A stretch of DNA of 64,000 nt, from the IMG/VR virus record IMGVR_UViG_3300040801_001224, positions 124,001 to 188,000 of that record; one strand, given 5' to 3'. The translations under genes were made by a program, and so were the position numbers. How positions within the stretch are numbered: position 1 is the stretch's first letter; every line of letters begins with the position of its first letter. Below are positions 14,269 through 52,951 of the stretch, in pieces. The notes beneath the pieces are model-generated. The model was not told the origin of the DNA. It worked only from the letters and a program-made list of their open reading frames with translations, and did no database searches.

Positions 14269-14715
14269 ATGCGTAGAACACACAAAGGTTACTTCACACC
14301 TAAAAACCCACATAAGCTCCTAAGTAATAAGCGAATTATTTTCCGTAGTTCCTGGGAAAAGAAATTTTGTGAATTCTGCGATACACACCCTAATATCATA
14401 CAGTGGGCAAGTGAGCATGAAGATATAAAAATACCTTATTTTAATCCCTTACAGAATAAATATACAGTGTATGTTCCAGATTTCTTTGTGGTATATCAGA
14501 CAAAGAATGGAAAAAAGAAAATAGAACTAATTGAAATTAAGCCTGCGGCAGAAACGTATATTAGTGAAGCAAAAACAAATAGACACAAAGCCGCTTTAGC
14601 AGTCAATGTGGCCAAATGGAAAGCCGCACAAGAATGGTGCGAAAGAAAAGGAATCACATTTCGTGTTGTCACAGAACATGAAATATTCCGTAACCCAAAA
14701 AAGAAGAAACGATAA
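14269..14715 (+). CDS. Head completion nuclease (T4 gp4-like, TnsA-like PD-(D/E)XK)
   Basis: FRSSWE..FC..CD.HP.I.QWASE; YVPDF; LIEIKP; KWKAA. Confidence 0.92.
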   Translation: MRRTHKGYFTPKNPHKLLSNKRIIFRSSWEKKFCEFCDTHPNIIQWASEHEDIKIPYFNPLQNKYTVYVPDFFVVYQTKNGKKKIELIEIKPAAETYISEAKTNRHKAALAVNVAKWKAAQEWCERKGITFRVVTEHEIFRNPKKKKR

Positions 14716-15322: not shown

Positions 15323-15703
15323 ATGGCATACTCAGATAAAGTTATTGATCATTATGAAAATCCACGTAACGTCGGCTTTATTGAAGAAGACGGCGATGGC
15401 ATTGTTGGTACTGGCATGGTCGGTGCCCCGGCCTGTGGTGACGTAATGAAATTGCAGATCAAAGTAGACAACGATGGTATCGTCAAAGACGCAAAGTTCA
15501 AAACCTATGGCTGTGGCTCAGCAATCGCATCCAGTTCATTAGTCACAGAATGGGTAAAAGGAAAACCGGTAGACGAAGTAGCTGAAATTAAAAATACCCA
15601 AATAGCTGAAGAGTTATGTCTCCCACCAGTCAAAATACACTGCTCAGTACTCGCAGAAGACGCAATTAAATCAGCAATTAGCGATTATAAGTCAAAACTA
15701 TAA
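15323..15703 (+). CDS. iscU: Fe-S scaffold IscU
   Basis: YSDKVIDHYENPRNVG, GAPACGDVM, YGCGSAIASSS, LPPVKIHCS. Confidence 0.97.
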   Translation: MAYSDKVIDHYENPRNVGFIEEDGDGIVGTGMVGAPACGDVMKLQIKVDNDGIVKDAKFKTYGCGSAIASSSLVTEWVKGKPVDEVAEIKNTQIAEELCLPPVKIHCSVLAEDAIKSAISDYKSKL

Positions 15704-18188: not shown

Positions 18189-19445
18189 ATGGAAATTAAA
18201 GCAGACGAATTAGCAGAATTATTAAAGTTAGCAGGCGTTCAAGCACAACCAGAAATGGATGCGATGCCAGCAGAAGAGCCGGCGACGGTTGAATTACCGG
18301 TAATGGACGTTGAAATGCCAGGTGACGAAGGTCCTTGTTTTGATGATCAGGAAGCTGAAGTTGTAATGCGTGAAGAATATGATGAACATCTACATGATAT
18401 GTACATCGATGCTATTGAAGACGCAATCATGAAACGTTATGGTGATTGGTGGGACCAGGGCATTTATGATGAGCAACACTTACATGACCTAGCAGACGGA
18501 ATGATTGAAGCATGGAAAACATTTGGTGATAATGAGTTCGGTGAGTTTATTGAATACGATTACGCTACTGACACGGGTTCGTCTGTTGCCGTTGTTCCAG
18601 GCGAAGCATTTGAAATGTTCTTCGGAATGGCATCAAACAAAATATCAGAAAAAGAAATGGAAGACGATGATGATTGGGTTGCTCAAAAGAACGCAGACGA
18701 GCGTTACGGCCCAGTAGAAGAAGATGAAGATCCAGCACAGGGTGACATGGAACTAGACAACGGGTACACTGGTTCACATGAAGTTGCGTTAGACAAGACA
18801 AACGACAACCCATCAGGTGATGACAAAGACGAATTTACAATGGACGAGCCTAAAGGCTACCGTGCTGTTAAGATGGAAAACTGTGAAGAAACAAAAGCAA
18901 TTCACGAAAACCTAGTAAGCAAGTACGCAGAATTCATTAAAGAGTCTGAAGAAGTTGAAGAAGGTCGTGGTGGCGCAATGGCAAGAGCAGGCCAGAAAAT
19001 GAAGATGGACAAAGATAAAGGACGTTCATTAGATCACAGTTCAGAAGAGTTCAAAGCACTAGCGGCAATGTACCAGAAAAAAGCACAAGAACGTGATGCT
19101 GATAAAGCACAGGTTTTTGGCGAAGCTGGTGAAGTACATGGTGCTACATACACGGCAGACCAACAAGAAATGCTTTCATACCTAGCGAATTTTATCGGTG
19201 AAATGTTTGGTACTGGTGAAGAAACTGATGACATCGCACTACATGTTCTGGATGAACTTCCATACGAAACATTGGAAGACATGGAAGAAGCTGATTATGA
19301 CGGTACACTGGCTGACGAAGTTCAATACCACGTTGAAGCATACCAATCAGGCCCAGATCCCGAAGATGTAGCATATCAAGCAGACCAACAAGCATGGGAC
19401 GACTCAGCTGAAATGGATGAACTACGAGGATTAGCAGGTATCTAA
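18189..19445 (+). CDS. Acidic modular head-internal (prohead core-like) protein
   Basis: Very Glu/Asp-rich; LKLAGV and LRGLAGI motifs at the two ends. Confidence 0.65.
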   Translation: MEIKADELAELLKLAGVQAQPEMDAMPAEEPATVELPVMDVEMPGDEGPCFDDQEAEVVMREEYDEHLHDMYIDAIEDAIMKRYGDWWDQGIYDEQHLHDLADGMIEAWKTFGDNEFGEFIEYDYATDTGSSVAVVPGEAFEMFFGMASNKISEKEMEDDDDWVAQKNADERYGPVEEDEDPAQGDMELDNGYTGSHEVALDKTNDNPSGDDKDEFTMDEPKGYRAVKMENCEETKAIHENLVSKYAEFIKESEEVEEGRGGAMARAGQKMKMDKDKGRSLDHSSEEFKALAAMYQKKAQERDADKAQVFGEAGEVHGATYTADQQEMLSYLANFIGEMFGTGEETDDIALHVLDELPYETLEDMEEADYDGTLADEVQYHVEAYQSGPDPEDVAYQADQQAWDDSAEMDELRGLAGI

Positions 19446-19472
19446 ACTTGCTAATTCTTTTAGGAGAATTCA

Positions 19473-21038
19473 ATGGATGAATCGTTAGTCAAAAAAGCCT
19501 TTAAGAAAGTACGGTATACACCACAACAACTAGAAGAATTAAAAAAATGTATGCACCCGGACACTGGTCCGATGTACTTCATGGAAACGTTCATGAAGAT
19601 ACAGCATCCTACCAAAGGTGAAATCCCTTTTGAGCCATTCGAATACCAACATGAACTAGTAGAATCTTATCACAAGTTTAAATACTCAATCGCTATGATT
19701 GGTAGACAGCTAGGTAAAACTACGGTTGCGGCAGGCTACTTACTGTGGTATGCGATGTTTGTGAACGACAGTCATATACTTATTGCGGCACACAAATATG
19801 ATGGTGCTCTAGAGATTATGGATCGTGTACGCTTTGCTTATGAAGGATTGCCAGATCATATCCGTGCTGGTGTGCGTGAATACAACAAAAAATCATTAAA
19901 GTTTGATAACGGTTCAGTTATTGAATCACAAGCAACAACAACAAACACTGGGCGTGGTAAATCTCTTTCATTAATATACTTGGACGAGTTTGCGTTCGTG
20001 GAGCCCCGTATTGCGAAAGAATTCTGGACAGCGATATCACCGACACTAAGTACTGGTGGTAAGTGTATGATTACTTCAACGCCAAACACTGACGAAGATC
20101 AGTTCGCACATATCTGGTTTGAAGCATTAAAAGTTACTGATGAGTATGGAAACAAGATACGTAACGTTGGTAAGAATAATTTTAAAGCATTCCACGCCAC
20201 ATGGGAAGCCCACCCGGATCGTGATGAAGAATGGGCTGAAATAGAACGAAGTAAAATTGGCGAGGATCGTTTCAAAAGGGAACATGAATGTGAATTTATT
20301 TCATTCGAAGAGACTCTAATTAATCCAGTTAAATTAGCAAAGCTTGACGCAAAACAACCCATCTATGTTGACGGACATGTGCGTTGGTATAAAGAGATAG
20401 ATCCAAACAAAACATATGTTGTTGGACTAGACCCAAGTATGGGTACTGGTGGTGACAATTCAGCAATACAAGTATTAGAAGTTCCCACAATGGAACAAGT
20501 AGGTGAATGGCAACATAATAAAACACCAGTAGAAGGACAGGTCCGTGTTCTTAAACAGGTATGTAATAAGCTACATAATGCTGGCGTAAGTGATATATAC
20601 TGGTCAGTAGAATCCAATACCCTAGGCGAAGCAATCCTTGTGATCATACGAGACACCGGCGAGGAAACAATACCAGGAACGTTCCTTCACGATCAACGCA
20701 GAGACTTAGGCATGAAGCACAGACGCAAAGGCTTCATCACAACACACAAATCAAAGCTAGAAGCATGTGCTAGATTGAAATCATGGCTAGAGAGTGATAA
20801 GCTAAAAATTAGCTCACAAAACCTATTACAAGAATTAAAAATGTTTGTTGCTAAAGGCAACAGCTATGAAGCAAAGACAGGTGAGAAAGACGACCTAGTG
20901 ATGTCAATGATACTTGTAATACGTATGGCCATAGCAATCGCAACGTTCGATGACAGAGCATATAACGCCATTAATTCAAATATTGACTATGATGAAGATG
21001 GTGAATACTCAGCACCCATGCCAATAGTAATGATATAA
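19473..21038 (+). CDS. terL: Terminase large subunit (gp17-like)
   Basis: GRQLGKTT, LIYLDEFAF, ITSTPN, GLDPSMG, KDDLVMS. Confidence 0.97.
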   Translation: MDESLVKKAFKKVRYTPQQLEELKKCMHPDTGPMYFMETFMKIQHPTKGEIPFEPFEYQHELVESYHKFKYSIAMIGRQLGKTTVAAGYLLWYAMFVNDSHILIAAHKYDGALEIMDRVRFAYEGLPDHIRAGVREYNKKSLKFDNGSVIESQATTTNTGRGKSLSLIYLDEFAFVEPRIAKEFWTAISPTLSTGGKCMITSTPNTDEDQFAHIWFEALKVTDEYGNKIRNVGKNNFKAFHATWEAHPDRDEEWAEIERSKIGEDRFKREHECEFISFEETLINPVKLAKLDAKQPIYVDGHVRWYKEIDPNKTYVVGLDPSMGTGGDNSAIQVLEVPTMEQVGEWQHNKTPVEGQVRVLKQVCNKLHNAGVSDIYWSVESNTLGEAILVIIRDTGEETIPGTFLHDQRRDLGMKHRRKGFITTHKSKLEACARLKSWLESDKLKISSQNLLQELKMFVAKGNSYEAKTGEKDDLVMSMILVIRMAIAIATFDDRAYNAINSNIDYDEDGEYSAPMPIVMI

Positions 21039-21073
21039 CATTAATGTGATAAATACATTAAAGGAGTAAGGGC

Positions 21074-23197
21074 ATGATCAAACATTCAAAACTAGCCACA
21101 TCAGTATACCAGATCCTAAAGGGTCACGGTTCATTGCCTACTATGTTTACACGGGAAGGTCAAGAAACAGTTGACCCAGCTGAAGCACAGTATATGTGGG
21201 TAAATGATCCAAACATTATGATTGCTATAGATCCAATGGATGGTACAATCCGTTTTGAAAAGAGTGACACATTGCCACTAGAAAAAATTGATAAGCTACG
21301 TAAGCAGTTACGCAAATTAGCAAACGACAACGCCCTAAATTTCCAATTCAAAATTATTGGTGGTGAGATTACTCCAAAGGATTATTCTGCAGAAACTAAA
21401 AGACAGGAAAAAACAATGGAAAGTATTATATTAGAAGGTTTTTCAAAACTAAGAGGTTCAACTAAAACTAGCTATCAGATGTTAGAAAACGCACGTCTAG
21501 TTATTAAACACCGCCTACCGGTAAACGAAGAAATTCGTGGCGCACGTAGCCGTAACATTCAGGCGATATTTATTGAGAGCAATGGCGAACGCTTCCGCTT
21601 CCCAGTAAATAACCTAGCAGGTGCTCGAGCGGCACTACGCCACGTTGTAGAAGGCGGTAAGATTGATGATCAGATTGGCAACTATATTGTTGAGTCTACA
21701 AAGAAGTTAATTAAGATGCGTGAGTTTGTTCGTTACGCACGTACCAACAAGCTTATCAACGAGGATACAGCAGAAGCAGTTGACCTAGTTAAAGAAAATA
21801 TCCAAGTAATAGCTTCCGAAATCCACAAGATCACAGGTAAGAAAACTTACGAGTCGATTAAAACACGTATTGAAGAATCAAACAATGAAGTACTAGAAGA
21901 GAACGATATTGATGAACTGAAAGACATGTTCACTATTAAGCGTTTTGACGAGAAGTTCCTAGACCTACTTCCCGATGTTAAGCAGATGGTCAGCGAACGC
22001 CAATCATTCCTACGTAGAATTGAAGAAGCGTCAGAGCAAGAAATCAAATTAGACGAAACCAAATATGTTTCGGATACAATTATTGAGCATACCACACGTG
22101 AAGGTGAATTGAGTTCACGTTTACAGATGGTAGCGGCATCAATAATGGAAAATGAAGAACTAGCTAGTTATGTTAGCTCACTAGCAGGCAAGCTAGTAGA
22201 AGGCGAGCTAAATGCTTTTGAAAGTTCTGTGCTAGGTAATGTCCTACGTAATGCGAAAATCCAAGAAAGCGTGGATGCTGATCTATTAGACTTTGCTAGG
22301 CAGTACTGCCAGATGTCAGGTATTGACATTCACTTACCCGGTGTTACCGAAGAAGAGCGCATCAAGTGTGCCCAGGAATTCATCGACCGCACAGGCGTTA
22401 GCTCAGCAGATGAGCTAGAAGCGTACATTGAAGGCCAGGAATCATATGTTGCGGCTATGATGCAGGACATATTCCAGTCAGCAGGCGATGACAGAATGTT
22501 TGGCGAAGCTGTCCAAGATATGGAACACTTTGATCTAGGCCAAATGAAAGATCGTATCCGTTCAATGTCAGACGAAGAACTATCAGGTTGGATCGGCCAT
22601 CAGCCACCGGAAGACGCAGTAGGCGGCCGTTACTTCATGAAAATTGTTGGTCACGAACTTAAGAAGCGTGGCTTAGACGAAGGCTACACAGTATTACCTC
22701 AAATGTCAGACGAAGACCAAGCACGTTACCAAGAGCGTGATGGTTTAGAAGGTCCATTTAGAGCAAGAAGCGGTAAAGTTTACTACTATGACCCAAGTGA
22801 AGGCAAGTACTATGATCCAGATACAGACTTTTACATCAGTGATGAAGAGTTCATGAAGCATGATCAATATGGTTTAACACAAGAAGGCTTCGGTGACTTC
22901 GTTAAAGGAATGGCCCGAAAAGGTGTTAACGCACTAGACAGAAAAGCAGTTGACCAAATATTCAAAGCAATTGATATGACAGGTTCATGGTTAATGGTAG
23001 CAAGTGAAATTTCAGATCTAGATGAAAAGAAGAAAGCTAACATGCTACGCTCAATGCGTGACTTCTGTGAACACAACCCAGACGATATGCGTTGTGACAC
23101 GTTGAAGAAAATGATACAGTTCATAGAACCAGAAATGAAAGAAGCGCAACAGTTAGAAGAGTCATTAAATAAATTTGACCCAAAGTTTCTTTTTTAA
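21074..23197 (+). CDS. Large head-internal/core protein with appended modules, including an OCRE-like YYYDP repeat
   Basis: RSRNIQAIFIESNGERFRFP..LAGARA..RHV core; VYYYDPSEGKYYDPDTDFY; late promoter at 21048. Confidence 0.7.
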   Translation: MIKHSKLATSVYQILKGHGSLPTMFTREGQETVDPAEAQYMWVNDPNIMIAIDPMDGTIRFEKSDTLPLEKIDKLRKQLRKLANDNALNFQFKIIGGEITPKDYSAETKRQEKTMESIILEGFSKLRGSTKTSYQMLENARLVIKHRLPVNEEIRGARSRNIQAIFIESNGERFRFPVNNLAGARAALRHVVEGGKIDDQIGNYIVESTKKLIKMREFVRYARTNKLINEDTAEAVDLVKENIQVIASEIHKITGKKTYESIKTRIEESNNEVLEENDIDELKDMFTIKRFDEKFLDLLPDVKQMVSERQSFLRRIEEASEQEIKLDETKYVSDTIIEHTTREGELSSRLQMVAASIMENEELASYVSSLAGKLVEGELNAFESSVLGNVLRNAKIQESVDADLLDFARQYCQMSGIDIHLPGVTEEERIKCAQEFIDRTGVSSADELEAYIEGQESYVAAMMQDIFQSAGDDRMFGEAVQDMEHFDLGQMKDRIRSMSDEELSGWIGHQPPEDAVGGRYFMKIVGHELKKRGLDEGYTVLPQMSDEDQARYQERDGLEGPFRARSGKVYYYDPSEGKYYDPDTDFYISDEEFMKHDQYGLTQEGFGDFVKGMARKGVNALDRKAVDQIFKAIDMTGSWLMVASEISDLDEKKKANMLRSMRDFCEHNPDDMRCDTLKKMIQFIEPEMKEAQQLEESLNKFDPKFLF

Positions 23198-26911: not shown

Positions 26912-27445
26912 ATGACAGATCTTATCACAAGAGCAAGAGAATTTGCTATCACAGCACACGAGTCGATTGGCCAAAAGCGCAAGTACAGTGATGACCCATA
27001 CTGGGTTCATCCTGAGCGAGTTGCGGCTATGGTTGCTGATTTCGGTGGAACTCCGGAAATGGTTGCGGCCGCCTGGTTACATGACACAGTCGAGGACACG
27101 CCTGTTACAATTGAAGAAATTGAGGCAGAGTTTGGTTCAGAGGTCATGGCTCTAGTTGACGATTTAACCGACGTTAGCCAGCCAGAAGACGGCAATCGAG
27201 CATTCCGTAAAGCAATGGACCGAGACCACACTGCTCAGGCATCAGCTGATGCTCAGACAGTCAAGTTGTGTGACTTAATCGACAACACTGCCAGCATTGT
27301 TGAGCATGACGTCAAGTTTGCTAGGGTTTACCTGAGAGAGAAGAAGCTCTCACTTGAAGTCCTTACAAAAGGCGACAAGCGTTTGCAGACACTTGCTTGG
27401 GGCAAATTACGAGAAGGTGCGAAGCAAATTGGCCTCGAACTGTAA
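26912..27445 (+). CDS. SpoT/Mesh1-like HD hydrolase (small alarmone hydrolase-like)
   Basis: AH..GQKRKY..DPY.VHP..VA; AAWLHDTVEDT; VKLCDLIDN. Confidence 0.88.
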   Translation: MTDLITRAREFAITAHESIGQKRKYSDDPYWVHPERVAAMVADFGGTPEMVAAAWLHDTVEDTPVTIEEIEAEFGSEVMALVDDLTDVSQPEDGNRAFRKAMDRDHTAQASADAQTVKLCDLIDNTASIVEHDVKFARVYLREKKLSLEVLTKGDKRLQTLAWGKLREGAKQIGLEL

Positions 27446-43782: not shown

Positions 43783-44066
43783 AGATAACAGAGATTATTA
43801 TAGAACAAAAAGAAGAAGAAGTTTGCGAAGCTAGGATGGCTTGGGCTAGAAAAGGCAACAAAGTTGTTCGTAAGTACCGCTGTACTTCAGGCCCACGCAA
43901 AGGTAGAGTTGTATCAAATCCAACACAATGTTCAAAGCCAATTGACATAAAGAAGCGCATGAATTTAAAAAGAACAAAAGCGGCAAACGCTACACGAATT
44001 AAACGTAAGACAGCTAGGACAAAACGCTTAAACCCAGCGTCTAAAATGCTAAAGAGGTTAAACTAA
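43779..44066 (+). CDS. Basic prohead core/DNA-binding-like protein (MKITEIIIE tag)
   Basis: Acidic leader then a K/R-rich body with RCTSGPRKGRVV..C. Confidence 0.7.
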   Translation: MKITEIIIEQKEEEVCEARMAWARKGNKVVRKYRCTSGPRKGRVVSNPTQCSKPIDIKKRMNLKRTKAANATRIKRKTARTKRLNPASKMLKRLN

Positions 44067-44623
44067 TGATAAGAAAATTAAACGAGACTATGCAGATGTT
44101 ATCTGAAGAATCACTAGCAGACAAGCTACAAAAGGAAATGGGCATTGAAGCCACTGAAGAAGTTAAAGAGTTGGGATTCACAGAATATTTGGAAGTTGCT
44201 TCTGCCCTAGAAGCCGGTGATGAAATGATGGTGCGTGACCTGCTTGGATTGGGTCTTGAAGAAGACTACACGAAAGCTAAAGTAACTGATGTGCGTCCGG
44301 GACAAGAATTAACATATCAGGATGACAAGGGTCGTGAGACGAAAGTTGATTTGCGTGATCCAGATCATGAACTAGGTTTAGCAGTATTGGATATGACAGG
44401 AAACCGACCAGCATTGGACGATCGTGGCGAAGATGTTACGCCAAATGCCAAAGAGATTGAACGTGGTGACGAGTTTATGATTGATCTAGAAGAAATGAAA
44501 AAATTGGCTGGCATTGAAGATGAAGATGGCGCTGAAGAGGAAGTTGAAGAAACAACCTCAGCAGGCGGAATCGCAGTAGCGGCACAGCCAATGGGAAAGA
44601 TGATAAAACGTAAGAAGAAGTAA
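44066..44623 (+). CDS. Acidic head-internal modular protein
   Basis: LSEE|, LEE|, EMKKLAGI, VEE|TTSAGGIA...MIKRKKK. Confidence 0.65.
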   Translation: MIRKLNETMQMLSEESLADKLQKEMGIEATEEVKELGFTEYLEVASALEAGDEMMVRDLLGLGLEEDYTKAKVTDVRPGQELTYQDDKGRETKVDLRDPDHELGLAVLDMTGNRPALDDRGEDVTPNAKEIERGDEFMIDLEEMKKLAGIEDEDGAEEEVEETTSAGGIAVAAQPMGKMIKRKKK

Positions 44624-50228: not shown

Positions 50229-51221
50229 ATGGCAGTTCAAATGAAAACCTATAAGGAAGCCTACGTCTATGACTATGACGTACCGGTGGAAATGGCCAAA
50301 CAACAGAATGAAGTTTTTTGGTTAGCAGATGAAATTAAAGTAGAAAAAGACGTACAGGACATCATGGTAAACATGACAGAGTCTGAGCGTCACGGTGTTA
50401 TCACAGTGTTAAAACTGTTTACACTATACGAGTTAGTTATTGGCAAGGAATACTGGGGCAACCGTGTGATGAAGACATTCCCTCGCCCAGACATACAGAT
50501 GATGGCAAGTGCGTTCTCATACTTTGAGTTAAACGTTCACGCACCATTCTATAACAAACTAAACGAAGCCCTTCACCTTAACACTGAAGAGTTTTATACA
50601 TCTTACGTTGACGATCCAGTTCTTAAAGAGCGTATGCGTTTCGTAGAGAAGTCTGTTATCAGCAAGAAAGATCTTGTTTCTGTTGGTGCATTTTCACTTA
50701 TCGAAGGTGCTGTACTGTATTCTGCATTTGCTTTCTTAAAGCACTTCCAGTCAGTGGGCAAAAACAAGTTATTAAACGTGGTACGTGGTATTAACTTCTC
50801 AGTGCGTGACGAAAACCTACACTGCCTAGGTGGAGCATGGATTTACAATCAGCTAAAGAAAGAAATGATTGAAGCAGGTGAAGAAGATGAGCAATACTTC
50901 AAAGACGTTGAAGAAGAAATCCGTGCAGTAGCATCTAAGATTTACGAACACGAAGCACGTATCGTTGACATGATCTTTGAAGAAGGTCCAATGGATGGTA
51001 TTACAGATATCCAGATGAAGCGTTTCATTGAATCACGCATTAACATCTGTCTGAAGAACTTAGAAATCAAGCCAATCTTTGAATCAACATACAATCCTAT
51101 TGCGGATTGGTTCTACGACGGAATCAACGCATATCAGATGAACGACTTCTTCACAGGAGTTGGTAACAGTTATAACAGAAACTGGTCAGAAGACAGTTTC
51201 TCATGGGGGCAAGTAGAATGA
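50229..51221 (+). CDS. nrdB: Ribonucleotide reductase class I beta subunit
   Basis: FWLADEI, ELNVHAPFY, EGAVLYSAF, RDENLH. Confidence 0.95.
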   Translation: MAVQMKTYKEAYVYDYDVPVEMAKQQNEVFWLADEIKVEKDVQDIMVNMTESERHGVITVLKLFTLYELVIGKEYWGNRVMKTFPRPDIQMMASAFSYFELNVHAPFYNKLNEALHLNTEEFYTSYVDDPVLKERMRFVEKSVISKKDLVSVGAFSLIEGAVLYSAFAFLKHFQSVGKNKLLNVVRGINFSVRDENLHCLGGAWIYNQLKKEMIEAGEEDEQYFKDVEEEIRAVASKIYEHEARIVDMIFEEGPMDGITDIQMKRFIESRINICLKNLEIKPIFESTYNPIADWFYDGINAYQMNDFFTGVGNSYNRNWSEDSFSWGQVE

Positions 51222-52951
51222 ACAAACCAAAGTCAGATATTAGTTTAGATCCAATGATGGATAAAAACTTATTACAGCAGTTTTCAGAAGAACGCAAAGC
51301 AGGCCAGGAAAGCGGTGACATTCCAGAGTGGATGACTACTGGCGGCTATCAGATGTTTAAGACAAAATACTCTTACAATGGTAGCACAGTTAAAGAATCA
51401 TTTGAACGTATTGCCCGAGCGGCCGCAGAACACACACCAAAACGCCAGGTATGGGAAGAACGCTTTTTTGACATCATGTGGAAAGGCTGGTTAGCGTGTA
51501 GCTCACCAGTACTAGCAAACATGGGTACAGAGCGTGGGTGTCCAGTATCTTGTTCAGGCGGTTATGTTGGTGACTCTATTTACAATTTTTATGATTCGCA
51601 ATTAGAAACAGCTATGTTAACTAAGAACGGCTTCGGCACATCATCTTACCTAGGTGATTTGCGTGAACGTGGCGCAGAAATTGCTACAGGCGGTCATGCT
51701 TCTGGTGTTGTCCCAGTATTTAATGACTTTGTTCAAGTATCACGTGACGTAAGCCAGGGAAACACACGACGTGGCGCCTGGGCAGGATACCTAGACATTG
51801 ACCATGATGATTTTTATGAGCTAGTAGACGATTTAATGGCAGAGCCAGATGATAAGAACATTGGTTGGATTGTTACAGACGCATTCATTGAGCGAATGGA
51901 TGCTGGTGATCAAGATGCTATAGAACGCTACCAACGTGCTATGAAGGCAAAATGTGTTACGGGTAAAGGCTACTTTTTCTTCAAGGACAAAGTGAACCGC
52001 ATGAACCCAGAATGCTATAAGCAAAACGAACTAGACGTCAAAGCATCAAACCTATGTACTGAAATTACTCTATTCTCAGACCACCAGCATACATTCACTT
52101 GCGTATTAAGCTCAATGAACCTGGCTAAGTGGGATGAATGGAAAGATACTGACGCAGTATTTTGGGCAACGGTATTCTTAGATTGTATCGCAGAAGAATT
52201 CATTCACATGGGACGTAAGATTCGTGGTCTAGACAAAGCAGTACGTATGACTGAGAAAGGTCGCGCATTAGGCTTAGGTACATTAGGTTTCCATACATTG
52301 CTACAAAAGAAAATGTTACCATTTGACAGCTTCGACACATTCCAATTAAATGCGGAAATCTTCCGTCACATGGACAGAGAATCAATGAGAGCAACTAAAT
52401 GGATGGCTGAAGCATACGGTGAGCCAGAATGGTGTAAAGGATTCGGTATCCATAACACACATCGTCTAGCAGTTGCGCCAAATACTAGTTCAGCATTAAT
52501 GTGCGGTGGCGTATCACAAGGCATTGAGCCAATTGTACAAAACGTCTATAATCAGCCAACAGCGGCAGGTGAAATAGAACGCATTAATCCACAGCTATTA
52601 GAGATAATGAAAAAGCGTGGTAAGCACACTAAGGCTGTCAAGAAAGACATTATTGATAACAACGGTTCAGTACAGCACGTTGATTGGTTAAGTGATGAAG
52701 AAAAACTTGTTTTCAGAACAGCATTTGAGATTGATCAGGGTGCTATTATTCGTTTAGCAAGCCAACGTCAGAAGTGGATTGACCAAGCACAGTCAATTAA
52801 CTTGTTCTTTGATGCTAACGAAGATGAAGCGTACATTTCAAAGATTCACGAACAAGCGTTCAAGGATCCAAACATTAAATCACTATACTATATGCGTAGT
52901 ATGGCAGGCATTCAAGCGGCTAAAGATGAATGTCAAGCATGTGAAGGCTGA
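51218..52951 (+). CDS. nrdA: Ribonucleotide reductase class I alpha subunit (short, no ATP cone)
   Basis: SNLCTEI, APNTSS, QSINLF, KSLYYMRS, C-terminal CQACEG. Confidence 0.95.
   Translation: MNKPKSDISLDPMMDKNLLQQFSEERKAGQESGDIPEWMTTGGYQMFKTKYSYNGSTVKESFERIARAAAEHTPKRQVWEERFFDIMWKGWLACSSPVLANMGTERGCPVSCSGGYVGDSIYNFYDSQLETAMLTKNGFGTSSYLGDLRERGAEIATGGHASGVVPVFNDFVQVSRDVSQGNTRRGAWAGYLDIDHDDFYELVDDLMAEPDDKNIGWIVTDAFIERMDAGDQDAIERYQRAMKAKCVTGKGYFFFKDKVNRMNPECYKQNELDVKASNLCTEITLFSDHQHTFTCVLSSMNLAKWDEWKDTDAVFWATVFLDCIAEEFIHMGRKIRGLDKAVRMTEKGRALGLGTLGFHTLLQKKMLPFDSFDTFQLNAEIFRHMDRESMRATKWMAEAYGEPEWCKGFGIHNTHRLAVAPNTSSALMCGGVSQGIEPIVQNVYNQPTAAGEIERINPQLLEIMKKRGKHTKAVKKDIIDNNGSVQHVDWLSDEEKLVFRTAFEIDQGAIIRLASQRQKWIDQAQSINLFFDANEDEAYISKIHEQAFKDPNIKSLYYMRSMAGIQAAKDECQACEG

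What the first reader, a model, noticed from the sequence alone, without database searches (positions are those of the whole stretch)
18189..23197. Core proteins flanking terL carry swappable peptide cassettes, including an OCRE-like module
After its conserved core the 707-aa protein reads KIQE | SVDADLL...MFGE | AVQDMEH...GLDE | GYTVLP...GLEGPF..GKVYYYDPSEGKYYDPDTDFY...LTQE | GFGDFVK...LEE. The 418-aa protein is similarly segmented (MREE, KISE, PVEE, FIKE, VEE, VFGE). Inference: essential scaffold genes serve as carriers for small effector domains released by the prohead protease, a hidden accessory proteome that ORF-level annotation misses.
Basis: inference. Interest (0 to 1): 0.62.

Follow-up and report, generated by a model that had tools for sequence, protein, structure and literature searches.

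The report
Swappable domain cassettes on jumbo-phage protein
A virion protein encoded next to the DNA-packaging gene of a 328-kb phage carries a string of four small domains that related phages have swapped in and out at short Glu-Gly/Ser joints resembling the cutting sites of the phage's own head protease; the swapping is shown here, the cutting is not.

Summary
The window lies in a complete 328-kb jumbo phage (PA5oct/RaK2/121Q clade, microbial-mat metagenome). The 707-aa protein after terL is a conserved core (aa 1-398, PHROG 13484 "virion structural protein") followed by four segments (399-478, 479-536, 537-604, 605-696) and an 11-aa tail. Segmentation is real. S2 sits in the upstream (418-aa family) gene of a sister contig. 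S4, a 62-aa OCRE-like module, occurs in at least 85 unrelated proteins and as a free 83-aa ORF in KVP40-type phages, and it is closer to those copies (61-69%) than to the copies in its nearest core relatives (40-42%). The phage encodes a T4 gp21-type protease, and [VILM]-x-E|[GSA] is strongly enriched in its putative scaffold. Sites 398, 536 and 696 fit that motif; 478 and 604 do not. Cleavage and effector function remain untested. The 418-aa protein is an acidic, mostly disordered scaffold-like protein whose "E junctions" are at chance level. Beyond the window, orthologues use one in-frame 17-nt linker (QGVAE|G) at which recombination breakpoints lie.

The parts
18189..19445 (+). 418-aa acidic protein P0002 (Glu 14.8%, Asp 12.4%), upstream of terL. 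Syntenic with PA5oct structural protein gp281.
   Evidence: ORF. No Pfam, PHROG or phage tblastn match. Only 3 relatives in 5.8 billion proteins, and they differ by block indels. AF2 mean pLDDT 48.6, with 245 of 418 residues below 50. PA5oct synteny and its ESI-MS/MS virion note.
18201..18239 (+). N-terminal motif of P0002 (aa 5-17, ...ELAELLKLAGV), of the type [DE]Lxx[LIM]xxLAG[IVL].
   Evidence: Invariant in the relatives. Shared with the PA5oct gp281 N-terminus. The same motif ends the putative scaffold of this genome (G000:79478-80590) and of L038.
19410..19442 (+). C-terminal motif of P0002 (aa 408-418, ...MDELRGLAGI).
19473..21038 (+). Large terminase subunit (521 aa).
   Evidence: Pfam Terminase_6N/6C and phrog_36964 at E 8e-122.
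21074..22267 (+). Conserved core of P0001 (aa 1-398). It has an N-domain (aa 1-113), a disordered linker holding the nearly invariant site [IVL]-x-E121|[SG], and a middle domain (aa 126-398).
   Evidence: phrog_13484 'virion structural protein'. 41.5% identity to PA5oct gp278, a virion protein by ESI-MS/MS. 279 homologues, with core-only forms of about 425 aa. AF2 model. Site 121 keeps the motif in 114 of 120 sequences and site 318 in 119 of 120.
22268..22507 (+). Cassette S2 (aa 399-478), a helical unit with atypical GC3 of 0.51.
   Evidence: 36% identity over 72 aa (E 8e-14) to the C-terminus of P0216, the P0002-family protein of sister contig L010. Also found in fragment P0219. GC3 is in the top 1% of 80-codon windows of the genome.
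22508..22681 (+). Cassette S3 (aa 479-536), a helical unit ending in the linker-like RGLDE536|GY.
   Evidence: 33% identity over 54 aa to the same position in P0006. Absent from P0004 and P0005. AF2 linker 536-544.
22682..22885 (+). Cassette S4 (aa 537-604): a widespread 62-aa module (EGY..LP..DRERYQERdGLEGPF..GKVvYYDPkeGkYYDPDTDfY), OCRE-like in its Tyr-rich beta part.
   Evidence: phrog_13298 at E 2e-12; Pfam OCRE 20-23 bits, below the cut-off. 55-70% identity in at least 85 proteins that lack the core. Free 83-aa ORF KVP40.0154. AF2 pLDDT above 90 with four strands.
22886..23161 (+). Cassette S5 (aa 605-696), a helical unit.
   Evidence: AF2 helices 603-699. Only marginal similarity downstream of S4 in P0123 (21% over 80 aa). 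No phmmer hit on its own. Atlas gives leads only.
23162..23197 (+). Conserved C-terminal tail (aa 697-707, SLNKFDPKFLF) preceded by L-E-E696|S, then the stop codon.
   Evidence: The tail is shared with P0004, P0005 and P0006. 88 of 119 family members end in [ILVM]xE[SAGC] plus about 17 aa with (Y/F)FDK(Y/F).

Best explanation
The 707-aa protein is a virion-associated protein of a PA5oct/RaK2-type jumbo phage. It consists of a conserved two-domain core, a C-terminal array of four small independently folding cassettes, and a short conserved tail.

Shown: the cassettes are mobile. They are gained, lost, replaced and moved between proteins, including the other terL-flanking gene, and between phages. 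This happens by recombination at short interdomain joints of the form G-[VL]-x-E|G.

Inferred: these joints, together with the conserved sites at E121 and before the tail, are substrates of the phage's T4 gp21-type prohead protease, which cuts after Glu with an aliphatic P3. On this reading the precursor enters the prohead and is cut into a core and free 6-10 kDa domains.

What the freed domains do is unknown. Possibilities are cargo delivered with the DNA, or disposable assembly pieces.

The 418-aa protein is best read as an acidic, largely disordered prohead-core or scaffold-like protein. It carries the scaffold's LAG[IVL] end motif at both termini and has one or two exchangeable C-terminal blocks.
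For: Modularity and exchange (shown):
- AF2 linkers coincide with junctions 478, 536 and 604.
- Family lengths run from 425 to 1197 aa, with variable inserts between the core and the tail.
- S2 sits in the upstream-gene homologue of the syntenic contig L010, whose downstream gene (P0005) has no cassettes.
- S4 of P0001 is 61-69% identical to copies in unrelated carriers, but 40-42% identical to those of P0004 and P0006, which share 80% and 63% core identity.
- S2 has foreign GC3.
- In orthologous genes of relatives (TerL-core-SSB-UvsX loci L069, L089, L092, L111) the joints are QGVAE|G, encoded by one 17-nt word. DNA identity between L069 and L111 (98.8%) ends exactly at that word, and L111 has a tandem cassette duplication bounded by it.

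Protease link (inferred):
- A Peptidase_S77 gene is present.
- The putative scaffold next to it has 12 [VILM]xE[GSA] against 2.0 expected, rank 1 of 398 genes. P0001 ranks 4th.
- The MCP N-terminus has three such sites, the last at E46. This matches the roughly 5 kDa lost from the 121Q MCP (PMC5646251).
- The module S4 is preceded by aliphatic-x-E|G in 67 of 72 carriers, inside a stretch that AF2 leaves disordered.
- Some carriers start with 8-aa leaders such as MKIDQITE|G, like the T4 capsid-targeting sequence (the T4 sequence is from my own knowledge).
- gp21-family proteases all cut after Glu (PMC5694885).
- PA5oct homologues of both proteins are in virions, and 121Q shows an inner-body-like signal.
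Against: - No cleavage data exist for any member of the family.
- Known gp21-family cleavages remove N-terminal propeptides (13 of 14 sites in SPN3US). Here the conserved part is N-terminal.
- At E398 the full motif with P1' G/S/A holds in only 12 of 119 relatives.
- Junctions 478 and 604 have Phe and Thr at P3.
- P0001's motif excess (P about 0.003) would not survive correction for 398 genes.
- S4 also occurs as a free ORF between nrdC.11 and dda in KVP40-type phages, and in carriers set among DnaJ, ClpB and DNA-polymerase genes. Cassettes are therefore not confined to head genes.
- The conserved EGY could be a binding motif of the module rather than a cut site.
- In relatives the linker is conserved at the DNA level, so recombination alone could explain its sameness.
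- No cassette of this protein matches an enzyme or known anti-host family.
- Co-folding of protease and junction gave no answer.
Confidence: 0.5

Rival explanations
1. Same mobile cassette array, but never cut. The protein works as one multi-domain adaptor whose variable C-terminal domains bind changing partners (host or phage factors). The Glu-Gly joints are flexible acidic linkers that persist because they serve as in-frame recombination points.
For: - The linker word is conserved at the DNA level beyond what the peptide requires. GTG and GCG make up 8-21% of Val and Ala codons, yet 74 of 108 non-seed linkers use the exact 14-mer.
- Recombination breakpoints lie at the linker.
- S4 occurs in non-structural gene neighbourhoods.
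- The E398 site is poorly conserved at P1'.
- Known protease substrates lose N-terminal parts.
Against: - The joints share P3 aliphatic, P1 Glu and P1' Gly/Ser/Ala with the sites that crowd the putative scaffold and the MCP propeptide of the same genome.
- Conserved sites sit in disordered linkers at E121 and before the tail.
- CTS-like leaders occur on some carriers.
Confidence: 0.35
2. The C-terminal segments are disposable assembly or propeptide material. They are degraded by the prohead protease and expelled before DNA packaging, like T4 gp22, gp67 and gp68, and have no function after assembly.
For: - In T4, core proteins are cut to small peptides that leave the head (PMC9958956).
- P0002 and the 262-aa acidic ORF beside the protease look like such core proteins.
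- No effector domain was recognised.
Against: - S4 is conserved at 55-70% identity across very different phages and also exists as a free gene. That implies a function of its own.
- The cassettes are compact folded units rather than coiled-coil filler.
- Relatives carry Zn-ribbon, HNH or nucleotidyltransferase cassettes.
Confidence: 0.1
3. There are no cassettes. The 'xxxE|' pattern is what any Glu-rich protein shows, and the C-terminal 300 residues are one fast-evolving tail.
For: P0002's junction strings are at or below chance. Glu makes up 10.7% of P0001.
Against: - AF2 linkers lie at the junctions.
- Relatives differ by presence or absence of whole segments.
- S2 and S4 are found in other carriers.
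- S4 identity is discordant with core identity.
Confidence: 0.03

Closest known systems
T4 prohead core and internal proteins (IPI-III, Alt, gp22/67/68) processed by the gp21 protease
   Same: - A gp21-family (Peptidase_S77) protease lies in a portal / acidic-protein / protease / scaffold / MCP gene row.
- Sites after Glu with aliphatic P3 crowd the scaffold and the MCP N-terminus.
- Some cassette carriers have short N-terminal leaders ending in aliphatic-x-E.
   Different: - T4 internal proteins are single-domain proteins with a 10-aa N-terminal targeting peptide. Here a conserved N-terminal core carries a C-terminal string of exchangeable domains.
- No cleavage has been measured here.
phiKZ/201phi2-1/SPN3US head and ejection proteins cut at (S/A/G)-x-E (PMC10052503, PMC5694885)
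   Same: These are giant-phage heads with many internal proteins, multiple cuts after Glu within one precursor, and hints of an inner body in this clade (121Q; PMC5646251).
   Different: - It is a different phage lineage and protease subfamily (S80 rather than S77), and P3 is small rather than aliphatic.
- The propeptides there are N-terminal and are not known to be shuffled between proteins.
Polyvalent proteins of phages and conjugative elements (Iyer et al. 2017, PMC5512222)
   Same: - Both are long virion-delivered proteins built from many unrelated domains with extreme mosaicism.
- Release by a peptidase is proposed for both.
- One structural relative of the core is annotated 'large polyvalent protein-associated domain'.
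   Different: - Polyvalent proteins are defined by catalytic or anti-defence domains and usually an embedded zincin-type peptidase. None is found here.
- The stereotyped Glu-Gly joints and the shared DNA linker are not part of that description (one search found no 'linker' and no 'OCRE').
OCRE domain (Pfam PF17780; RBM5/RBM10-type Tyr-rich beta domain)
   Same: S4 has a Tyr-rich YYD...YYD beta-hairpin stretch. 33 of 34 module copies hit the model at E<=0.01, and the AF2 model shows four short strands.
   Different: - Only profile positions 13-33 of 52 match.
- P0001's copy scores 23.1 bits against a cut-off of 24.7.
- A module profile finds no OCRE structure in the PDB.
- The N-terminal half of the module (DRERYQERdGLEGPF) is not OCRE.
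Mobile boundary sequences that promote module shuffling in phage genomes (for example promoter-stem-loop cassettes of T4-type phages; recalled from my own knowledge, not checked here)
   Same: A short conserved DNA word is repeated at module borders, and recombination breakpoints lie on it.
   Different: Those elements are intergenic and shuffle whole genes. Here the word is inside ORFs, always in one reading frame, and it shuffles protein domains.

Membership tests
PHROG 13484 / PA5oct gp278 family (virion structural protein next to terL) | Sequence match of the core to the family profile and to characterised members | tested here: met
   phrog_13484 at E 1e-33 over aa 8-222. 41.5% identity over aa 1-399 to PA5oct gp278. 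279 homologues.
PHROG 13484 / PA5oct gp278 family (virion structural protein next to terL) | Conserved gene position (terL, this gene, gp32-like SSB, UvsX) | tested here: met
   The window, PA5oct, and loci L008, L010, L047, L067, L089 and L092.
PHROG 13484 / PA5oct gp278 family (virion structural protein next to terL) | Presence of the protein in purified virions | not testable with these tools
   Known only from the ESI-MS/MS note on the PA5oct homologue. The window's phage is uncultured.
Substrates of T4 gp21-type prohead protease | Genome encodes a gp21-family protease in a head-gene cluster | tested here: met
   PF03420 at 94.4 bits, G000:78912-79337. phrog_207 at E 6e-61, flanked by portal, scaffold-like and MCP genes.
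Substrates of T4 gp21-type prohead protease | Cleavage motif (aliphatic-x-Glu, small P1') at accessible places | tested here: inconclusive
   Junctions 398, 536 and 696, and the conserved site 121, fit the motif and lie in or beside disordered linkers. Junctions 478 and 604 do not fit. The excess over chance is P=0.003-0.004, uncorrected.
Substrates of T4 gp21-type prohead protease | Observed processing (mature N-termini, mass shift) | not testable with these tools
   No proteomic data could be reached: no supplement is held for the PA5oct paper. Co-folding gave no answer.
Substrates of T4 gp21-type prohead protease | N-terminal targeting or propeptide removed | tested here: not met
   The N-terminus of P0001 is part of the conserved folded core. 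The variable parts are C-terminal. P0002 starts with MEIKADELAE, which ends in L-A-E, but that is followed by a conserved motif.
Polyvalent proteins (Iyer et al. 2017) | Several catalytic or anti-defence effector domains in one large protein | tested here: not met
   No Pfam family above cut-off in P0001 or P0002. Among the 10 relatives and carriers scanned, only DnaJ-type Zn-ribbon, cytidylyltransferase-like, HNH and DUF7230 domains were found.
Polyvalent proteins (Iyer et al. 2017) | Embedded peptidase (zincin-like MPTase, assemblin-like) | tested here: not met
   None detected. The protease is a separate gene.
Polyvalent proteins (Iyer et al. 2017) | Mosaic domain architecture varying between close relatives | tested here: met
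OCRE domain (PF17780) | Score at or above Pfam's gathering threshold (24.7 bits) | tested here: not met
   20.0 bits in the whole protein and 23.1 bits for the excised module. 33 of 34 copies hit at E<=0.01, best 4.2e-6.
OCRE domain (PF17780) | Similarity to solved OCRE structures | tested here: not met
   The module profile against PDB sequences gave nothing at E<0.3. Foldseek of the whole model against the PDB gave no OCRE hit. The module alone was not folded separately.
Prohead scaffold/core proteins (for the 418-aa protein) | Acidic, helical or disordered, shares a terminal motif with the scaffold, virion- or prohead-associated | tested here: inconclusive
   Acidic and mostly low-confidence in AF2. 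An LAG[IVL] motif at both ends, as at the C-terminus of the scaffold candidates. No sequence homology to a characterised scaffold.

The most novel reading that the evidence does not exclude
In this clade of jumbo phages, head-module genes are in-frame cassette arrays. A short joint does double duty. It is a fixed 17-nt word, CAAGGTGTGGCGGAAGG (QGVAE|G), in many relatives and a degenerate G-L-D-E|G in this window.

As DNA, the joint is the recombination point that lets phages shuffle small domains between proteins without breaking the frame. As peptide, it is the cut site of the gp21-type prohead protease. Each phage would therefore package a combinatorial set of free 6-10 kDa proteins that no ORF-level annotation lists, some of which may enter the host with the DNA.
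Probability: 0.25. Interest if true: 0.85.

Novelty: new variant of a known kind. Interest (0 to 1): 0.66.

Why it matters
If the joints are cut, the protein inventory of jumbo-phage heads is larger and far more variable than gene lists show. A conserved 'carrier' gene next to terL would then be a place to look for fast-evolving, possibly host-directed small proteins.

Even if they are not cut, the data show a mechanism of domain shuffling in phages that I could not find described. In relatives, the same short in-frame DNA word bounds unrelated cassettes in at least 120 viral contigs, and recombination breakpoints lie on it. This would give a concrete, testable model of how modular phage proteins are assembled. 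It would also provide a natural scheme of linkers for engineering packaged cargo in laboratory phages.

The 62-aa S4 module is conserved at 55-70% identity from KVP40-type to jumbo phages. It has no known function and deserves a binding-partner search.

Tried and rejected
- **Paralogous cassettes in the same genome.** tblastn of aa 403-707 and of P0002 against all 328 kb found only themselves. Cassettes are therefore not duplicated among this phage's own proteins.
- **S2 as a copy of P0002's own C-terminus.** No similarity was found.
- **Near-identical DNA in sequenced phages.** None was found.
- **Fold of the core.** Foldseek against the PDB gave nothing at E<=0.001. BFVD returned only uncharacterised relatives.
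- **ESM Atlas for S2+S3 and for S5.** Scores were low, so these are leads only.
- **Exhaustive HMMER search with S2+S3.** Four hits resulted. Two are RTX-like repeat artefacts, one is a real S2 fragment (P0219), and one is a weak S3-like repeat protein.
- **S5 on its own.** Pairwise similarity after S4 in P0123 is marginal.
- **The QGVAEG linker DNA word in the window or its genome.** It is absent, even allowing up to 3 mismatches.
- **Population variants in public reads.** Three runs of one microbial-mat sample hold the stretch at 3-5x as short Logan contigs. They show no differences and no joints skipping a cassette. This says little, because contigs drop rare variants.
- **Complex prediction of the protease with aa 520-556.** The result was 'no answer' (score 0.00, controls not run). 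It is not evidence either way.
- **The LAG[IVL] regular expression.** It also hits the ribonucleotide reductase large subunit (window 51203-52951). That is a chance match, so the motif list needs pruning.
- **PA5oct proteome tables.** These were not held.


Full report
**What the region is.** The window is bases 124001-188000 of a 328,096-bp virus record with direct terminal repeats. Public reads place it in a microbial-mat metagenome. The flagged stretch holds three ORFs on the + strand:
- a 418-aa acidic protein (18189-19445, P0002);
- the large terminase (19473-21038);
- a 707-aa protein (21074-23197, P0001).

A gp32-like SSB and a UvsX recombinase follow. The nearest sequenced phages are Pseudomonas phage PA5oct and the 121Q/RaK2/CBB group. 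PA5oct has the same gene order, and its counterparts of both flanking proteins are marked as virion proteins by ESI-MS/MS. The database gene call for P0001 starts at Met24 (P0003). Relatives conserve the first 23 residues, so the 707-aa reading is the better one.

**The 707-aa protein is segmented.** The junction Glu residues are at 398, 478, 536, 604 and 696.

AlphaFold2 with an 86-row alignment gave mean pLDDT 83. It shows:
- an N-domain (aa 1-113), a disordered stretch (114-119) and a middle domain running to about 398;
- then four compact units separated by low-confidence stretches at 471-485, 536-544 and 599-606.

With only 10 E[GSA] dipeptides in aa 399-707, that has a chance probability of 0.0185. 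S4 is a four-stranded unit with pLDDT above 90. S2, S3 and S5 are helical.

**The segments vary between relatives.**
- A word-indexed search found 279 homologues. Core-only forms are about 425 aa, and others run to 1197 aa.
- In most members the core ends ...LEN..[IV].E. A linker follows, then [IL]-K-E-S and a tail of about 17 aa with (Y/F)FDK(Y/F). 88 of 119 members end this way, and 15 end instead in a Zn-ribbon. The variable material is therefore inserted between the core and a conserved tail.
- The three closest relatives show the pattern directly. P0005 (71% core identity, 437 aa) has no cassettes. P0004 (80%) has an S4-like unit, the tail and an extra domain. P0006 (63%) has S3-like and S4-like units.

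**The cassettes occur in other carriers.**
- *S4.* The module is found at 55-70% identity in 85 further proteins with no similarity to the core. It lies at any position, including the extreme N-terminus. It is also a free 83-aa ORF (KVP40.0154) in 49 KVP40-type Vibrio phage records and a 73-aa 'OCRE domain-containing protein' in BFVD.
- *S2.* It matches the C-terminus of P0216 at 36% identity over 72 aa (E 8e-14). P0216 is the homologue of the upstream 418-aa protein on contig L010. That contig reads P0216 - TerL - P0005, in full synteny with the window. The same cassette therefore sits upstream of terL in one phage and downstream in the other.
- *No vertical descent.* P0002 itself has no S2-like part. 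The S4 copy of P0001 is 61-69% identical to copies in unrelated carriers, but only 40-42% identical to those of P0004 and P0006. S2 has GC3 of 0.51 against a genome mean of 0.343 +/- 0.065, within the top 1% of windows. These three results rule out simple vertical descent of the array.

**What the carriers look like.** Many S4 carriers read like polyproteins. They are runs of unrelated small units separated by the same hexapeptide QGVAE|G (41 copies in 88 proteins). The motif [VILM]xE[GSA] occurs 580 times against 206 +/- 12 in shuffles, although the relatedness of the sequences inflates this figure. Few units match Pfam: a DnaJ-type Zn-ribbon, a cytidylyltransferase-like domain, HNH and DUF7230. 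S4 itself is preceded by aliphatic-x-E|G in 67 of 72 cases, within the stretch that AlphaFold leaves disordered. Some carriers begin with 8-aa leaders such as MKIDQITE|G.

**The linker is a DNA word.**
- In L007 and L008 every GVAE linker is encoded by CAAGGTGTGGCGGAAGG, although GTG and GCG are minor codons there at 8-21%.
- All 155 analysable instances are in frame as Q-G-V-A-E-G in long ORFs. The median open stretch is 605 aa, against 28 and 17 in the other frames, and the flanks are unrelated.
- After removing one seed copy per locus, 74 of 108 further G[VIL]AEG still use the exact 14-mer.
- Several of these loci are TerL - core - SSB - UvsX neighbourhoods of relatives of the window's phage. 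There the linker lies in the orthologous gene, for example directly after the core in L089.
- L069 and L111 are 98.8% identical in DNA up to a linker and unrelated after it. L111 also carries an exact tandem duplication of one cassette bounded by the linker.
- No paper in the searchable library mentions this peptide in phages.
- The window's own genome lacks the word. Its junction 536 (R-G-L-D-E|G-Y) has the same G-[VL]-x-E-G form.

**The protease link.**
- The genome encodes a T4 gp21-type protease (Peptidase_S77). It sits in a row of portal, a 262-aa very acidic ORF, protease, a 370-aa coiled-coil protein and the major capsid protein (MCP).
- The 370-aa protein is conserved across the clade and is annotated once as a scaffolding protein. 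It has 12 [VILM]xE[GSA] sites against 2.0 expected, the strongest excess among 398 predicted genes. P0001 is fourth, with 10 against 3.4.
- The MCP has three such sites in its first 46 residues. This fits the roughly 5 kDa lost from the 121Q MCP (PMC5646251).
- Proteases of this family cut after Glu (PMC5694885; PMC10052503).
- Within the P0001 family the motif is nearly invariant at E121 (114 of 120, in the disordered inter-domain stretch) and at E318 (119 of 120). At E398 the P3 residue is Val or Ile in 108 of 120 and P1 is Glu in 75 of 120. P1' is variable there, so only 12 of 119 relatives keep the full motif.
- These data make processing plausible. They do not show it.

**The 418-aa protein.**
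- It has only three relatives in 5.8 billion proteins. It matches no family and gives a poor model with pLDDT 48.6.
- Its relatives differ by blocks. P0216 lacks aa 64-180 and has other inserts, and the region after the VFGE312-type junction is replaced in P0216 by the S2-like cassette.
- The Glu-junction motif is not enriched: 4 against 2.5 expected, and E[GSA] 9 against 13.5.
- Its N-terminus (...ELAELLKLAGV) and C-terminus (...MDELRGLAGI) carry the motif that ends the scaffold candidates of this genome and of L038. The motif recurs at the ends of some P0001-family members and S4 carriers.
- I read it as a prohead-core or scaffold-like protein. This is an inference from position, composition and motif.

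**Verdict.** Release by the prohead protease is a reasonable, testable inference. 'Effector' and 'essential scaffold' are not supported.

The closest known concepts are three. The first is T4 internal proteins with gp21 processing (PMC9958956). The second is the multiply cut head and ejection proteins of phiKZ-type phages. The third is polyvalent proteins (PMC5512222). The array differs from all three in its C-terminal position, its lack of enzyme domains and of an embedded peptidase, and its stereotyped joints. In relatives those joints are a fixed in-frame DNA word at which recombination occurs.

**Limits.**
- S5 was not searched alone in the large databases.
- The modules were not folded separately.
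- The reads available are low-depth contigs of a single sample.
- The co-folding job gave no answer.

Noticed in passing
L007:10001-13645, L008:10001-12655, and loci L011 onward (for example L069:3830-6214, L089:6123-8120, L111:2-2209): One in-frame 17-nt word, CAAGGTGTGGCGGAAGG (QGVAE|G), separates unrelated cassettes in long ORFs of at least 120 IMG/VR contigs. It is conserved beyond what the peptide needs. Homology breakpoints between L069 and L111, and a tandem cassette duplication in L111, lie exactly on it. It is absent from the window's genome.
   Followed up: partly
window 18201-18239 and 19410-19442; G000:C1:79478-80590 (C-terminus); window 44066-44623; window 63661 to beyond the window end: A short motif [DE]Lxx[LIM][KR]xLAG[IVL] ends the scaffold candidates of this phage and of L038. 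It caps both ends of the 418-aa protein and recurs in two more ORFs of unknown function, and at the C-termini of some P0001-family members and S4 carriers. It may be a prohead-incorporation signal. The hit in the ribonucleotide reductase (window 51203-52951) is a chance match.
   Followed up: partly
G000:C1:78046-78834 (L009:6046-6834): A 262-aa ORF between the portal and protease genes with 22% Glu and 17% Asp and no family match. By position and composition it resembles T4 prohead-core proteins gp67/gp68.
   Followed up: no
G000:C1:81881-83548 (L009:9881-11548): A 555-aa HNH/homing-endonuclease gene sits directly after the major capsid protein gene.
   Followed up: no
window 22799-22837: In run X3 of the same microbial-mat sample, a contig matches only the YYDP core of S4 and continues on both sides with unrelated sequence. 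It is a second S4 carrier from another genome in the same community.
   Followed up: no
window 15323-15703: A phage-encoded IscU/NifU-type Fe-S cluster scaffold (NifU_N, E 1e-52), an auxiliary metabolic gene.
   Followed up: partly
window 26912-27445: A 177-aa HD-domain protein (HD_4, E 1e-17), of the RelA/SpoT-hydrolase-like type.
   Followed up: partly
window 14269-14715: A 148-aa TnsA-like endonuclease N-terminal domain protein (E 6e-23) a few genes upstream of the terL block.
   Followed up: no
window 21074-21142: The public gene call for the 707-aa protein starts at Met24 (684 aa). The 23 residues upstream are conserved in relatives, so that call is probably too short.
   Followed up: yes
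L005:10001-12637 and L007:10001-13645: In two other jumbo-phage contigs (326 kb and 268 kb) the S4-carrying polyprotein lies in a conserved block with DnaJ, ClpB-like AAA+ proteins, ferritin and DNA polymerase B, not near head genes.
   Followed up: no
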